From NCBI GenBank assembly GCA_965644265.1, contig OZ286459.1:117242001-117306000 (forward strand): 64,000 nt of DNA. The letters are read 5' to 3'. The position numbers and the translations under genes are program-made. Below are positions 18,499 through 23,816 of this stretch, one piece after another. The number at the start of each line of letters is the position of its first letter. The first letter of the stretch is position 1. Origin of the DNA: Glycera tridactyla (taxonomy: Eukaryota). A model generated the notes under the pieces. The model had not been told where the DNA came from, ran no database searches, and saw only the letters and a list, made by a program, of their open reading frames with translations.

Positions 18499-19470
18499 CT
18501 ACATGACTATTGACTTTGGACGAACATACGACCTGAATGCTGCTGAAGACCATCTTCCTTTTATTCGTATTTGCTCATCTGAACAGCCACTTAAAGCCCA
18601 GTCCGAACACCTACCTATTCTGAAACTGTGGCTTGATAAACCATGGTTCCTGCCAATAACGAGGTTTCCAATAGTATTCAACCAAACGTTAACAAATCTA
18701 TTTGTTATGGATACTCCATCTCTCACAAATAAGGCACCTGCAACATGAGGTCTGACGGATAAATAATGACACATACAAACAATAGGACATAAAGGATCAC
18801 CTGGTGTCCTTTCCAGTATAAAAGATCTGGCACCTTTTGAAAATTTAAAAGAGTGAATCGTGAGCTTGAAAGCTATAACTGATCCATTTAACTCAGCCTG
18901 TTCAAGGTCAGCCAAGTTCACACAGTGAGCACTAGAGCCTGTACTAGCATATTCGGAGACTCTCAAACATGCAGAATAGGCCCAGATAAACACAACTCTC
19001 AGTAAGATACCGTCATAACTATTTCCGAAAAGACTCGTTACACAGGACACTAATTTCAAGAGTAAACCTTTATCTATGGGAGTTCTGGAATCACAACCCA
19101 CTTGCGATTTTCCAATACCAGCTACTGTTTTACTTACAAGATAATGCTTGCTCCAGTCATCTAAATTGCGAACTTTCAAACCATGAGAAATTGCCGAAAG
19201 TTTTGACTTGATTGTCGTTGCTTTTAAACCCTTTTCATAAAGCGTAGCAACATACAAACAAACAGCTTCGTGTGAAAGATCAATCCCCAATTTTTCATAG
19301 AAAGATTGAAAATCATACCAGACCTTCTGATAATTCCGAACAGTAGACTGGGCAAAGGAATCGCACACTAACTGATTTACCAGACACCACAAATTGTTGG
19401 ATCGTAATTGGTCTGGACCGGAACAGGATGTATAGCCATACCCGCCTTCTTGAGGTCTTCCTGTGAACAT
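18499..19470 (-). CDS. Tyrosine recombinase (integrase) of the Ngaro element, 323 aa
   Basis: Intact catalytic motifs CLRVSEY (R), SHSFRIG (HxxR), GRWSS (W) and FRSYVR (Y), with an N-terminal core-binding-like region. Confidence 0.93.
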   Translation of the reverse strand: MFTGRPQEGGYGYTSCSGPDQLRSNNLWCLVNQLVCDSFAQSTVRNYQKVWYDFQSFYEKLGIDLSHEAVCLYVATLYEKGLKATTIKSKLSAISHGLKVRNLDDWSKHYLVSKTVAGIGKSQVGCDSRTPIDKGLLLKLVSCVTSLFGNSYDGILLRVVFIWAYSACLRVSEYASTGSSAHCVNLADLEQAELNGSVIAFKLTIHSFKFSKGARSFILERTPGDPLCPIVCMCHYLSVRPHVAGALFVRDGVSITNRFVNVWLNTIGNLVIGRNHGLSSHSFRIGRCSDWALSGCSDEQIRIKGRWSSAAFRSYVRPKSIVM

Positions 19471-19643
19471 TTTGAACGAGACAATTTGTCAGGTAAGATA
19501 TTTTCTACACCTGGTATGTGACGAGCATCAAAATCAATGTCATTATAAAGAGAAAAGAGCATAATGTGTCTCATCAGACGCATGAGATTCTCCTCTTTGG
19601 CGGATCTTTTGTGGATTATCTCAACTACTGCAGCGTTGTCACA
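19377..19643 (-). CDS. C-terminal part of RNase H, shifted out of frame from the RT ORF
   Basis: Frame CDNAAVVEIIHKRS...DARHIPGVENILPDKLSR contains the RNase H CDN and HIPGxxNxxxDxLSR motifs. Removing one base from the A8 run at 19645-19652 joins it to the RT ORF. Confidence 0.85.
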   Translation of the reverse strand, partial: CDNAAVVEIIHKRSAKEENLMRLMRHIMLFSLYNDIDFDARHIPGVENILPDKLSRSKCSQEDLKKAGMAIHPVPVQTNYDPTICGVW

Positions 19644-21105
19644 GAAAAAAAATCACTCTTTTGTGTCTCAACGCTGCTCGAAAAGTGACCATGGCAACCA
19701 GTATAGGGAAGAATTCCAAGTAGGCAATATTTTGCTTCTGCCAATCATGTACATATTTCAGAGAAAACCAAAGTTTTCCAAACACCACGCCGGCTCCTTC
19801 TTTGCTAGCGTCTGAGGAGATGTATTCTGTTATACCCTTGTTAAGAGTAATGTCTCTTAAGAAAGAGTATCCATTATAATGTCGTAAAAAAGTACTCCAC
19901 ATAATGAGATCTTGTTGCAAGTGAAAGGTGAAAGGGACTAAGAAGGCTGGATTTGTGAAACCTCTAGTTGCATCTATTAGTCCCCGCAGAAAGGATTTAC
20001 CAACCGGAACTAGAGTACAACACCAGTTAAGTTTCCCTACTAACGATCTGATACAACCAAAAGTACATGACCTAGCTTCAAGAATTTCCTGTATTTGAGA
20101 AGAATATTTTAAGAGTTTATCTCTTGGTATGCGTGCAAAACCTTGCAAAACATTGATTTCAACTCCAAGAAAAGACAAAGTTTGAGAAGGGAGTACCGTC
20201 TTTTTTGGGCATAACGGTACCCCTATTTCTTGGCAAAGTTTCTTAAAATTATTCAAATGAGACAAGCAAGTGCTATAATCTTTAGCTGCAAAGCAGAAAT
20301 CGTCCAGCATATGAGATACACAATCTATACTCAATTTATTTTTACAGATCCATTCAAGGGACGAAGAAAATCTCTCAAAAATTCTACACGAAGAACGTCC
20401 CCCCATAGCCAGGCACTTGTTTATAAAATAATCATTACCAAGTTTCAACCCCATTAAATGAAATTGCTCTGGGCAAATAGGAACAATGCGAAAAGCCGAC
20501 TTGATGTCGGCTTTACACAAATGGGTAGTTTTACCTAGATGAATGACAAACTCAATGACTGACTGTACTGTGGTATACTTAACTGACGCTTCTGAGTCAG
20601 GAATATTCGCATTGATAGAAGAACTATTGTATGGTGCCGAAAGGTTATGAATAAGTCTGAACTTGCCCTCCTCCCTTTTTGGGACAATTGAAATAGGAGA
20701 AATTTGAATATTATTGTATGGGGGGCTCAAAAAGGGACCTGCTATACGTCCAAGTTGAACATCTTCAAACACTAAAGCTTTTGCTTGATCTAAAAGCTCA
20801 TGAACTGAAACTGAATTTCGACCTCTATACGCCGGAGATAGGCCAACAAAACCTATGTTAAATCCCACTGTAAAACCTTCAATGATGTATTCAGCCTCAC
20901 CTTCTGGATAACCTTCTAAAAGTTCCCTAAGACGATGGGTTTTTACTGGCGTTGTTATTTGCTGAAGGCTTGGATTTTCCAGAATTTTGGGCTGAACCAT
21001 GATTGCCGGAACTCCTGCAGGCATAAATTGGGTGGTTACCTGCGCACGATGGGCACGTGTGCTTAAAGGTACATTTGTCAAACAAACAACGTTTGCCACG
21101 TGCAT
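19639..21105 (-). CDS. Reverse transcriptase / RNase H (pol) of the Ngaro element
   Basis: Motifs RLIHNLS, KADIKSAFRIVPI, LAMGGRSS, HMLDDF and FLGVEI, and RNase H start SDASKEGAG...NIAYLEFFPI. First ATG at 21105 (open frame from 21150). Confidence 0.93.
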   Translation of the reverse strand: MHVANVVCLTNVPLSTRAHRAQVTTQFMPAGVPAIMVQPKILENPSLQQITTPVKTHRLRELLEGYPEGEAEYIIEGFTVGFNIGFVGLSPAYRGRNSVSVHELLDQAKALVFEDVQLGRIAGPFLSPPYNNIQISPISIVPKREEGKFRLIHNLSAPYNSSSINANIPDSEASVKYTTVQSVIEFVIHLGKTTHLCKADIKSAFRIVPICPEQFHLMGLKLGNDYFINKCLAMGGRSSCRIFERFSSSLEWICKNKLSIDCVSHMLDDFCFAAKDYSTCLSHLNNFKKLCQEIGVPLCPKKTVLPSQTLSFLGVEINVLQGFARIPRDKLLKYSSQIQEILEARSCTFGCIRSLVGKLNWCCTLVPVGKSFLRGLIDATRGFTNPAFLVPFTFHLQQDLIMWSTFLRHYNGYSFLRDITLNKGITEYISSDASKEGAGVVFGKLWFSLKYVHDWQKQNIAYLEFFPILVAMVTFRAALRHKRVIFFL

Positions 21106-22977: not shown

Positions 22978-23724
22978 CTAATACAAAGGCTTTTTGAAGC
23001 CACGAACAATCCTGCCTAAATTAGGCACGCTGGAGAGAAGAGCTTGTCGGATTTCCAAACCAAACCTTTTACTATACTTAGAATTTTCACGTGGAGTGAT
23101 ACCATCATCGCTCCAATCCGTCACGCTCGATGGAGCTTCGTCTATAAGAGAGCCAAAACCGCGTGTCGAATGGCAAATGTATGCTAACTCCCCGTCGCAC
23201 AGTGTCTCCAATCGAGCATTGAACAAGCGGGCCCTTTCACGAAAGTTGTCGGGCCCCTCAGCACGGTCTACGCAAGTCATGAAAACCACCACTTTAACTC
23301 CATGTTCTTTGCGGAAACATCTCCCCAGGTCAAAAAGGTCATCCGCTACATGTCGAGGCTGAAATTCCTCTCTACACAAATCATTGCTGCCCAGACACAC
23401 CACTACAACATCCGGGGCTAAAGCCGAAAGTGCTAAGGTTTCATCTTCAATGCCTGAATTTCCGCCATAAACTTCACAAAATTCCACAAATCTGAAGTTA
23501 ACCACATCAAACACGTGGTCAACCTTCATGAGCTTAGCATTAGCAGCACCGCGTGATTTCTTTCCAACTTGTATATCAGGCCACCAACCTTCTTGAACAG
23601 TGTTATCCAAAAGAAAATCATCCTGCATTTTTGTAAATGCGTGACCTAAAATAAGAGCTTTGGGATTGCGTCCCATCCATTGCGCAACTGGGATATACGC
23701 AAATTTAGGTTTCCAGTGCGCCAT
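22978..23724 (-). CDS. SGNH/GDSL-hydrolase-fold protein (probable pseudo-enzyme), 248 aa, upstream of gag
   Basis: Block I ILGHAF (Ser replaced by Ala), block III VVVCLGSNDL, and block V WSDDGITP (His replaced by Thr). ATG has A at -3 and G at +4. Confidence 0.8.
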   Translation of the reverse strand: MAHWKPKFAYIPVAQWMGRNPKALILGHAFTKMQDDFLLDNTVQEGWWPDIQVGKKSRGAANAKLMKVDHVFDVVNFRFVEFCEVYGGNSGIEDETLALSALAPDVVVVCLGSNDLCREEFQPRHVADDLFDLGRCFRKEHGVKVVVFMTCVDRAEGPDNFRERARLFNARLETLCDGELAYICHSTRGFGSLIDEAPSSVTDWSDDGITPRENSKYSKRFGLEIRQALLSSVPNLGRIVRGFKKPLY

Positions 23725-23779
23725 AGTCACGGAGTTGCAAACAAAGACAAGCAAGTAATCACCTCGGAAAACCAGTTGA

Positions 23780-23816
23780 AAATGGACCGAGCGCACGTGA
23801 CTCTGCTCTATTTATG
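23780..23816 (-). promoter_or_regulatory. Predicted TATA/Inr core promoter in repeat A1
   Basis: Minus-strand CATAAATAG at 23816-23808, E-box CACGTG at 23794-23799, and Inr-like CCATTTT with its A at 23783, 32 nt downstream of the TATA-like box. Motif inference only. Confidence 0.5.

What the first reader, a model, noticed from the sequence alone, without database searches (positions are those of the whole stretch)
19377..23816. One promoter, one donor, three acceptors: a possible splicing programme expressing all four retrotransposon ORFs
Seen on the minus strand: a TATA-like box (23815) and Inr (23783) in A1 would give a 21-nt ATG-free leader ending at GAG|GTGATT (donor 23763/23762). Candidate acceptors lie just before each downstream ORF. 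Gag: CCCTGAC-TATTTGTTTGTTTTAAG|GATG, with a good branch point and the ATG 1 nt after the splice site (22878/22877). Pol: TTCTAAT-TTTAAATTACAG| at 21128/21127, where the first ATG 22 nt later is the pol ATG (ACCATG). YR (weaker): ATACCAG| at 19511/19510, where the first ATG 40 nt later is the YR ATG. Unspliced RNA would translate the SGNH ORF, which is wholly nested in the 885-nt first intron. All four ATGs have A at -3. Inference: the element makes separate mRNAs for SGNH, Gag, Pol and YR, analogous to spliced pol mRNA in foamy viruses. I do not recall this being described for Ngaro/DIRS elements.
Basis: partly seen in the sequence, partly recalled or inferred. Interest (0 to 1): 0.82.

Follow-up and report, generated by a model that had tools for sequence, protein, structure and literature searches.

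The report
Ngaro retrotransposon with gene-bearing leader intron

Summary
Two of the five hold up.

Supported:
- The donor at the end of repeat A1 (23763|23762) and the acceptor abutting the gag ATG (22878|22877) are kept in every related family in this genome. This includes families whose synonymous sites are saturated and whose non-coding DNA no longer aligns.
- So are the TATA box, the CCATTTT initiator and a 20-21 nt ATG-free leader.
- Contigs of a public run of the same species (X1, evidently RNA) join a foreign exon exactly at the gag acceptor. A second X1 contig fits a leader-to-gag splice.

Not supported:
- The pol acceptor (21128|21127) and the YR acceptor (19511|19510) sit on freely varying codon positions and are absent from most families.

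New here:
- A likely second intron (20901|20900 to 18620|18619) removes pol and most of YR, giving a gag-only mRNA as in copia elements.
- A conserved acceptor lies inside repeat A (23853|23852), upstream of the promoter. X1 shows it in use; its purpose is unexplained.

Verdict: a splicing programme is likely, but with a different architecture from "one donor, three acceptors". First readers noted the same idea on other pieces of this genome (s1-333362, s1-340400), untested. I found no paper describing splicing in DIRS/Ngaro elements.

The parts
23764..24070 (-). Repeat A1 of the Ngaro element. A2 is its copy at 17306-17612.
   Evidence: Direct repeat at offset 6458, 97% identical; edges read.
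23853..23876 (-). Conserved acceptor-like site inside repeat A: TACTAAT branch-point motif, pyrimidine tract, CAG|AAG. The junction is 23853|23852, about 37 nt upstream of the TATA box. The A2 copy of the junction is at 17395|17394.
   Evidence: Kept in all families, including unalignable ones, as TTTGCAG|AAG, TTTTAG|GAA or TTTTCAG|GAT. An X1 contig joins a foreign exon end exactly here.
23808..23815 (-). TATA-like box (ATAAATAG).
   Evidence: A TATA box 32-33 nt upstream of the initiator A in every family where it was measured.
23779..23785 (-). Initiator CCATTTT, with the predicted transcription start at 23783.
   Evidence: YCCAYTYT is conserved in all families here. CCATTTT also occurs upstream of ORF1 in relatives from other organisms, L018 and L023. 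No direct mapping of the transcription start.
23763..23783 (-). Leader exon: 21 nt, no ATG. Its first 20 nt are the last 20 nt of repeat A.
   Evidence: Leader length is 20-21 nt in all nine copies measured, although the sequence differs. None has an ATG. In window coordinates the window copy also has a 21-nt leader.
23757..23765 (-). 5' splice site GAG|GTGATT (23763|23762).
   Evidence: AG|GT is present in all copies examined: GTGATT, GTAATT, GTGAAT, GTGTGT, GTATGC, GTGACG, GTGATC. In the L033/L042 family repeat A ends exactly at the exon-intron boundary. An X1 contig's leader piece ends at 23762, as a leader|GATG junction would.
22878..23762 (-). Intron 1, 885 nt.
   Evidence: Geometry. The L010-type X1 contig holds leader and gag pieces but none of the well-matching SGNH or pre-acceptor stretches.
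22978..23724 (-). SGNH/GDSL hydrolase ORF, 248 aa, wholly inside intron 1.
   Evidence: Pfam PF13472, E 4e-8. 78-97% amino-acid identity among copies. dN/dS about 0.05.
22878..22911 (-). 3' splice site region of intron 1: an invariant 18-nt block that includes CTGAC, then a T-rich tract, then AAG|G followed by the gag ATG (22878|22877).
   Evidence: The block is invariant in 11 copies down to 72% overall identity. YAG or AAG lies 0-1 nt before the gag ATG in 13 of 13 copies from at least 6 lineages. An X1 contig joins a foreign exon end to 22877 exactly.
20927..22876 (-). gag ORF, 649 aa, with a C-terminal zinc-finger region.
   Evidence: ORF. No Pfam hit. C-terminus conserved across families.
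20895..20903 (-). Candidate 5' splice site of intron 2, CAGAAG|GTGAGG (20901|20900), 26 nt after the gag stop codon.
   Evidence: AG|GTGAG is kept in 9 of 10 lineages. The Gly codon is always GGT and the Glu codon always GAG where the site is present.
18620..18635 (-). Candidate 3' splice site of intron 2, TTTCAG|AATAGG (18620|18619), inside the YR motif HSFRIG.
   Evidence: TTY-AGR in 15 of 16 copies. The X1 L010-type contig joins the gag-end piece (20984-20942) to a piece starting at 18621 and lacks the 201-nt, 90%-identical stretch 19493-19293.
21103..21128 (-).
   Evidence: The AG is not conserved. The ATG arises from a His CAT codon of gag. It is present in most lineages, absent in L008 and L009, and shifted by 6 nt in L036.
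19639..21150 (-). pol (RT) frame, +1 relative to gag and overlapping it by 239 nt. It is interrupted in this copy near 19650. The RNase H tail continues in another frame (19380-19652).
   Evidence: PF00078, E 6.5e-10. This copy reads 508 + 91 aa, against 585-604 aa (mostly 595-604) open in other copies.
19468..19511 (-).
   Evidence: The AG depends on Pro CCA; other families have CCG or CCT. The ATG is replaced by CTG, TTG or TTT elsewhere.
18499..19470 (-). Tyrosine recombinase ORF, 323 aa.
   Evidence: PF02899, E 1e-4. Box II motif HSFRIG.
16419..18444 (-). 3' repeat block: B1 17613-18444, A2 17306-17612, a 55-nt C-rich spacer 17251-17305, B2 16419-17250.

Best explanation
This is a Ngaro-type tyrosine-recombinase retrotransposon, ordered A1 - SGNH - gag - pol - YR - B1 - A2 - B2.

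1. Transcription is inferred to start at a TATA plus CCATTTT promoter in the last 50 nt of repeat A, at 23783.
2. The 21-nt ATG-free leader ends in a 5' splice site that sits at the A1/internal boundary.
3. Unspliced RNA has the SGNH esterase as its first ORF. It must also be the genomic RNA.
4. Splicing of the 885-nt intron 1 to the acceptor abutting the gag ATG makes gag the first ORF.
5. A second intron likely removes pol and most of YR. Its donor is 26 nt after the gag stop and its acceptor is in the YR tail. The result is a short gag-only mRNA, which would raise the Gag:Pol ratio as in Ty1/copia.
How they are translated stays open.

Shown: the conservation of the sites, and the use of the gag acceptor and of the acceptor in repeat A in vivo.

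Inferred: the transcription start, the pairing of the leader donor with the gag acceptor (one contig fits it), intron 2, and the translational consequences.
For: Conservation.
- 20 further copies were fetched from this genome.
- They include families with gag only about 44% identical to this copy.
- SGNH synonymous sites are saturated between families: pS 0.72-0.79, dN/dS about 0.05.
- TATA lies 32-33 nt before the initiator A in the nine copies measured and in the window copy. The leader is 20-21 nt and ends AG|GT.
- The gag ATG is preceded at 0-1 nt by YAG or AAG after a T-rich tract in 13 of 13 copies.
- By my criteria, donor-like sites occur at 0.23% of positions and acceptor-like sites at 0.57%.
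- Repeat A ends exactly at the donor in a distant family.

Direct evidence from run X1.
- X1 loose ends match copy L010 of this genome exactly, so it is the same species.
- One contig is L005-like at 28 of 29 variant positions. It carries the last 30 nt of an exon-like sequence fused to 22877.
- In this genome the 3' 25 nt of that stretch occur once, at C4:32314335, followed by GTAAGT.
- A second contig fuses the same stretch to 23852.
- An L010-type contig of depth 8.56 has a leader piece ending at 23762 and a gag piece 22767-22733. The bin depths are fully accounted for without it in the SGNH ORF and before the acceptor, although L010 matches the window at 86-88% there.
- An L010-type contig of depth 8.62 likewise links 20942 to 18621 and lacks the 201-nt, 90% stretch in between.
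- None of these joined forms exists in the reference DNA.

Intron 2 sites: AG|GTGAG in 9 of 10 lineages and TTY-AGR in 15 of 16 copies.
Against: - X1 is only guessed to be RNA by the tool, and its contigs are short.
- For the two L010-type joints the tool says 'between: not known'. The spliced reading therefore rests on my depth accounting and on the aligner finding 60-200 nt stretches at 86-90% identity. It did miss a roughly 33-nt stretch at about 85%.
- No contig shows the leader|gag junction for copies close to the window copy.
- The clean junctions at the gag and A acceptors come from a foreign exon, so they prove acceptor competence, not pairing with the element's own donor.
- No transcription start data exist.
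- No spliced retrocopies occur in the genome.
- The intron 2 sites lie in coding sequence, are absent from one lineage each (L035 donor, L036 acceptor), and are absent from distant relatives in other organisms.
- The window copy has a broken pol frame, so it cannot supply its own intact pol.
Confidence: 0.68

Rival explanations
1. One donor feeds three acceptors, so Gag, Pol and YR each have their own spliced mRNA, with pol expressed as in foamy viruses.
For: The motifs exist in this copy. A pol-frame ATG at the same gag His codon is present in most lineages. The pol frame stays open 239-260 nt upstream of the gag stop in all 11 intact copies examined, from at least 7 lineages, which suggests pol translation starts early in the overlap.
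Against: The pol acceptor AG exists only in the two closest subfamilies; elsewhere the codon is AAA, CCT, CCA or CCC. The YR acceptor AG is lost wherever Pro is CCG or CCT, which is most families. The YR ATG is CTG, TTG or TTT in five families with an open 323-aa frame. No X1 joint ends at 21127 or 19510.
Confidence: 0.04
2. The conserved blocks are not splice sites. They are promoter, replication or packaging signals: the end of repeat A as a template-switch boundary, and the block before gag as a protein- or RNA-binding site. The X1 junctions would then be aberrant or cryptic events.
For: The donor coincides with the boundary of repeat A, which the replication model needs anyway. The 18-nt invariant block before gag is longer than a branch point needs. 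There is no direct read of a leader|gag junction.
Against: In unalignable families the primary sequence changes, but AG|GT at +20/21 and T-tract plus YAG at the ATG persist. That is the signature of splice signals rather than of a specific binding motif. The spliceosome does use the gag acceptor to the exact nucleotide.
Confidence: 0.12
3. The two acceptors, in repeat A and before gag, mainly let the element be spliced onto host exons when it lands in an intron. It would then borrow host promoters, and the element's own leader donor would matter little.
For: Both clean X1 junctions are host-exon-like sequence joined to an element acceptor. The acceptor in A lies upstream of the element's own promoter, so in A1 it can only serve transcripts that come from outside. 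Acceptor to donor in A forms a 90-nt ATG-free exon in this copy.
Against: The element has a well-conserved promoter and a leader of fixed length. The L010-type contig fits own-leader splicing. No family copy lies on contig C4 of the reference, so the chimera is an individual insertion, not a general strategy.
Confidence: 0.12
4. The 30-nt sequence on the X1 contigs is a spliced leader added by trans-splicing.
For: The same short sequence is joined to two different acceptors at contig ends.
Against: About 30 nt equals k-1 of the assembly graph (Logan uses k=31; my own knowledge), so the length carries no information. The sequence is single-copy in the genome and differs by 3 nt from X1. It has no clear Sm site and no Rfam spliced-leader RNA match.
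Confidence: 0.03

Closest known systems
[quoted passage not shown]
   Same: gag, RT/RNase H and YR ORFs that overlap. Split direct repeats A1 ... B1 A2 B2. An extra SGNH hydrolase ORF. No methyltransferase.
   Different: The hydrolase is the first ORF, upstream of gag, whereas the amphibian elements have it after YR (PMC9210276). The 5' region carries conserved splice signals. None of the papers I could search describes natural splicing of a DIRS or Ngaro element.
Ty1/copia gag-only subgenomic RNA (Arabidopsis shGAG, PMC5580714; the Drosophila copia 2-kb RNA is from my own knowledge)
   Same: An intron that starts just after gag and removes pol, giving an mRNA dedicated to Gag and so an excess of structural protein.
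   Different: Here the acceptor would lie in the recombinase tail, not around the protease. There is a further upstream intron holding a whole gene. The evidence is one contig plus conservation, not mapped transcripts.
Retroviral major 5' splice site in the leader (env and accessory mRNAs; errantivirus env mRNA)
   Same: One promoter in the terminal repeat and a donor in the untranslated leader. Unspliced RNA doubles as genome and as mRNA for the first ORF. A spliced RNA brings a downstream ORF to the 5' end.
   Different: The roles are inverted. The accessory gene (SGNH) is read from unspliced RNA and gag needs splicing. The leader exon is only about 21 nt and ends at the repeat boundary.
Foamy virus spliced pol mRNA (reviewed in PMC7828637)
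   Same: pol has its own frame and possibly its own AUG rather than an evident Gag-Pol frameshift signal.

Membership tests
Ngaro (YR retrotransposon) | Reverse transcriptase and RNase H together with a tyrosine recombinase | tested here: met
   PF00078 and PF02899 hits. YR box II motif HSFRIG. pol relatives at 34-51% identity in marine samples and bivalves.
Ngaro (YR retrotransposon) | Split direct repeats A1 ... B1 A2 B2 | tested here: met
   A repeat of 307 nt at 97% identity, B repeat of about 832 nt at 99%, in the expected order.
Ngaro (YR retrotransposon) | SGNH hydrolase ORF placed after YR, as in the described amphibian elements | tested here: not met
   The SGNH ORF is first, before gag. 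The same layout is seen in relatives L018, L019 and L023.
Spliced retroelement with a leader donor (retrovirus-like) | A conserved 5' splice site between the transcription start and the first ORF | tested here: met
   AG|GT at +20/21 in all lineages measured. Its use is inferred from one contig.
Spliced retroelement with a leader donor (retrovirus-like) | A 3' splice site just upstream of a downstream ORF, used in vivo | tested here: met
   Met for gag only: conserved and used to the exact nucleotide in X1.
Spliced retroelement with a leader donor (retrovirus-like) | Junction reads linking the element's own donor to that acceptor | tested here: inconclusive
   One L010-type contig fits, but the tool could not say what lies between its two pieces.
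copia-type gag-only subgenomic RNA | An intron beginning after gag that removes pol | tested here: inconclusive
   Conserved AG|GTGAG 26 nt after the gag stop. An X1 contig links the gag end to the YR tail without the pol stretches. The exact junction was not read.
Foamy-type spliced pol mRNA | A conserved acceptor upstream of the pol AUG | tested here: not met
   The AG is present only in the two closest subfamilies.
Spliced-leader trans-splicing | A multi-copy spliced-leader RNA gene with donor and Sm site, and the leader on many mRNAs | tested here: not met
   Single locus in the genome, no Rfam spliced-leader RNA hit. The 'many mRNAs' part could not be tested.

The most novel reading that the evidence does not exclude
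Ngaro elements of this marine animal run a retrovirus-like alternative-splicing programme. An entire accessory gene (the SGNH esterase) lives inside the leader intron. A second intron makes a gag-only mRNA. A conserved acceptor inside the terminal repeat lets the element be exonised onto host transcripts. This would be the first splicing-based expression strategy described for tyrosine-recombinase retrotransposons.
Probability: 0.35. Interest if true: 0.75.

Novelty: new variant of a known kind. Interest (0 to 1): 0.62.

Why it matters
How DIRS and Ngaro elements express their overlapping ORFs is unknown. The papers I could search describe only ORF maps and replication models. A conserved leader intron that decides between an accessory enzyme and Gag, plus a copia-like gag-only RNA, would show that tyrosine-recombinase retroelements arrived at the same answer to the Gag:Pol ratio problem as LTR elements and retroviruses.

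It also makes the question testable with ordinary RNA-seq, because it gives exact junctions to look for. The fact that the repeat boundary coincides with the splice donor ties the replication model to RNA processing: the 20-nt terminal redundancy is nearly the whole 21-nt leader exon.

The acceptor inside repeat A matters for genome annotation. Sense-oriented intronic copies can trap host exons, as seen once in X1.

Tried and rejected
- RNA evidence was thin. Both run searches returned one small run each. The single read-laying run gave contigs only.
- The joint 22767/23762 looked uninformative at first, because L010 is only 72% like the window. Depth accounting rescued it in part.
- Spliced retrocopies were sought with four junction patterns and none was found. 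With about 20 copies in the genome this says little.
- The word search found no relatives of the gag or SGNH proteins. An SGNH profile found nothing in metagenome contigs. pol relatives from marine metagenomes are DNA contigs, not transcripts. They are too distant for the donor or intron 2 sites, though they do have an acceptor-like motif before gag.
- The foreign exon locus on C4 has no element within 20 kb downstream. It has no spliced-leader RNA features and no convincing ORF.
- No canonical -1 slippery heptamer lies in the pol/YR overlap.
- Copy L029 has an internal deletion and a leader insertion that are unrelated to splice sites.
- Complementarity of the 18-nt block to the rest of the element gave only one 11-mer, near chance.
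Copies were only compared.

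
Full report
**What is there**

On the minus strand the window holds a 7.65-kb Ngaro-type element.
- A1 is 24070-23764.
- The SGNH/GDSL hydrolase ORF is 23724-22978 (PF13472).
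- gag is 22876-20927.
- The RT frame is 21150-19639 (PF00078), +1 relative to gag.
- The tyrosine recombinase ORF is 19470-18499.
- B1 is 18444-17613 and A2 is 17612-17306. A 55-nt C-rich spacer follows, then B2 at 17250-16419.

In this copy the pol frame is interrupted near 19650: 508 + 91 aa, against 585-604 aa (mostly 595-604) open in other copies.

**The observation**

One extra T was written in the gag tract. The arithmetic also holds: a 21-nt leader, an 885-nt intron, 22 nt from the pol acceptor to its ATG and 40 nt from the YR acceptor to its ATG.

**Comparative test**

The genome is 2.04 Gb in 207 contigs. It holds about 20 related copies, and I fetched 20.

They fall into at least eight lineages:
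- the window's own type (95-97% identical);
- an 87% type;
- three lineages at 72-75% (L008, L009, L010);
- much more distant ones (the L031 type, L034, L035, L036), with gag 32-52% (mostly about 44%) and pol about 60% identical at the protein level.

SGNH is under strong purifying selection, with dN/dS about 0.05. Its synonymous sites are saturated between lineages, with pS 0.72-0.79. Any non-coding identity between lineages is therefore meaningful.

Three non-coding features survive in all lineages.

*1. Promoter, leader and donor.* A TATA box lies 32-33 nt before the A of a YCCAYTYT initiator. A 20-21 nt leader without ATG follows, and it ends in AG|GT. The leader sequence differs between lineages but its length does not.

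*2. The gag acceptor.* A T-rich tract and YAG (AAG in the window's type) stand 0-1 nt before the gag ATG in 13 of 13 copies. In the five closer lineages, 18 nt upstream that include CTGAC are invariant, while the neighbouring spacer does not align.

*3. A second acceptor-like site inside repeat A.* It lies about 37 nt upstream of the TATA box and consists of a TACTAAT or TTCTAAT motif, a pyrimidine tract and YAG.

By my criteria donor-like sites occur at 0.23% of positions in these elements and acceptor-like sites at 0.57%. Several lineages fall below the pyrimidine threshold, so the bare AG rule is the safer statement.

In the L033/L042 family repeat A ends exactly at the exon-intron boundary. 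In the window it ends 1 nt before it.

**The pol and YR acceptors fail the same test**
- The pol AG is the Gln codon CAG of gag. Other lineages have AAA, CCT, CCA or CCC.
- The YR AG needs Pro CCA. Most lineages have CCG or CCT.
- The YR ATG is CTG, TTG or TTT in five lineages whose 323-aa frame is open.

The pol-frame ATG at 21105 comes from a His CAT codon. It is present in most lineages but not all, which is weak evidence.

The pol frame is nevertheless open for 239-260 nt upstream of the gag stop in all 11 intact copies examined, from at least 7 lineages. The gag stop always falls at a UCU-UAR or UCU-CAR-UAG context, just before the conserved pol motif. How pol and YR are translated is unresolved.

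**Read evidence**

Two small public runs hold parts of the element. Both are the same species, because their loose ends match copies L010, L002 and L003 exactly.

*The chimeric contigs in X1.* A 444-nt contig covers gag 22464-22879 and then continues with 28 foreign letters. Read in sense, the foreign sequence ends in CAG and is followed by GATG, so the junction is 22878|22877 to the nucleotide.
- The contig is L005-like at 28 of 29 variant positions.
- The foreign stretch occurs once in this genome, at C4:32314335. Its 3' 25 nt match exactly and its first 5 nt differ at 3 positions. There it is followed by GTAAGT.
- No element lies within 20 kb downstream of that locus.
- A second contig joins the same sequence to 23852, just after the CAG of the acceptor in repeat A.
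- The foreign part is about 30 nt long, which equals k-1 of the assembly graph (my own knowledge of Logan). The length therefore does not indicate a short spliced leader.
- The locus is single-copy and has no spliced-leader RNA features.

I read these contigs as chimeric transcripts from an individual-specific insertion in a host intron. They prove that both sites are functional acceptors.

*Two L010-type contigs with gaps.* The first has depth 8.56, with a leader piece 23790-23762 and a gag piece 22767-22733.
- The tool could not say what lies between the pieces.
- The bin depths in the SGNH ORF and before the acceptor are fully explained by other contigs.
- L010 is 86-88% identical to the window over 69-75-nt stretches there.
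- The leader piece stops at 23762. A GAG|GATG junction would stop there, whereas unspliced L010 sequence would match at least to 23760.

This fits an own-leader-to-gag splice.

The second has depth 8.62, with pieces 20984-20942 and 18621-18511. It lacks the 201-nt, 90%-identical stretch 19493-19293.
- In L010 the first piece is followed by 41 nt ending in CTGAAG|GTGAGG.
- The second piece starts with AG, before AATAGG.

That suggests an intron from 20901|20900 to 18620|18619.
- AG|GTGAG is kept in 9 of 10 lineages, with invariant GGT and GAG codons where it is present.
- TTY-AGR is kept in 15 of 16 copies.
- Neither site is kept in distant relatives from other organisms.

None of the joined forms exists in the reference DNA. 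L010-type SGNH and pol stretches are absent from X1 while leader, gag end, YR tail and A2-B2 are present at depth 8-13. So X1 is RNA rather than genomic DNA.

**Caveats**
- The aligner missed a roughly 33-nt stretch at about 85% identity.
- The depth argument is therefore safe only for the longer and better-matching stretches.

**Model**

Unspliced RNA is the genome and the SGNH mRNA. Removal of intron 1 makes gag the first ORF. Removal of intron 2 gives a gag-only mRNA, as in Ty1/copia (PMC5580714).

The role of the acceptor in repeat A is unexplained.

**Literature**

Papers on DIRS-1, on Xenopus Ngaro elements and on VIPER/TATE mention no natural splicing. The amphibian elements carry the hydrolase after YR.

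Noticed in passing
window 17251-17305; also L042 after 8016 and L027 after 7085: A C-rich tract of the type CCCACCAYC directly follows A2 in this element, in a distant family of this genome, and in a relative from a marine metagenome. It may be a conserved replication signal: it reads as a purine-rich tract on the other strand.
   Followed up: partly
window 19458-19470: The 11-mer TGTTCACAGGA at the start of the YR frame is invariant in 11 of the 13 copies shown (one base differs in each of L034 and L036), synonymous positions included. Yet the 'start' codon just before it is ATG, CTG, TTG or TTT, often right after an in-frame stop. This could reflect non-AUG initiation, a frameshift site or dual coding. 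It is unexplained.
   Followed up: partly
window 20927-20935: The gag stop always sits in a UCU-UAR context (or UCU-CAR-UAG), exactly where the conserved pol motif begins in the +1 frame. This resembles stop-codon-dependent +1 frameshift sites. One degenerate copy (L009) has gag and pol fused in frame at this point.
   Followed up: partly
window 22950-22966: A GT-rich motif (GTTGTTATTGTTGT) just after the SGNH stop is shared with the very distant L031-type families, whose spacer is otherwise unalignable.
   Followed up: no
window 18605-18621: The YR box II codons (AGA ATA GGT AGG TGT ...) are conserved at synonymous positions across all families of this genome. They also contain a donor-like AG|GTAGGT 5 nt after the candidate acceptor.
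   Followed up: no
L043 (G000:C51:68681200-68687300): A solo A-spacer-B unit (1.2 kb, 95% identical to A2-spacer-B2) with no internal region. This is the analogue of a solo LTR, probably produced by recombination between repeats.
   Followed up: partly
window 19639-19660: The pol frame of the window copy is interrupted at a T-run, so this copy cannot make full-length RT/RNase H. Several other copies have all four frames open.
   Followed up: partly
window 24725-24866; L039 912-1088 and 8483-8659: Short repeats of the type GGTCTTTATAGAGAGG lie a few hundred nt upstream of this element and on both sides of the unrelated L031 copy. They may mark a preferred insertion target or a host repeat.
   Followed up: no
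L011 1300-1540 (G000:C4:32314100-32314340): A single-copy exon-like sequence ends in CAG|GTAAGT. In run X1 it is spliced onto Ngaro acceptors. The host transcript it belongs to was not identified, and it holds no convincing ORF.
   Followed up: partly
window 26487-26826: A tandem array of a 57-nt unit, 5-6 copies, outside the element.
   Followed up: no
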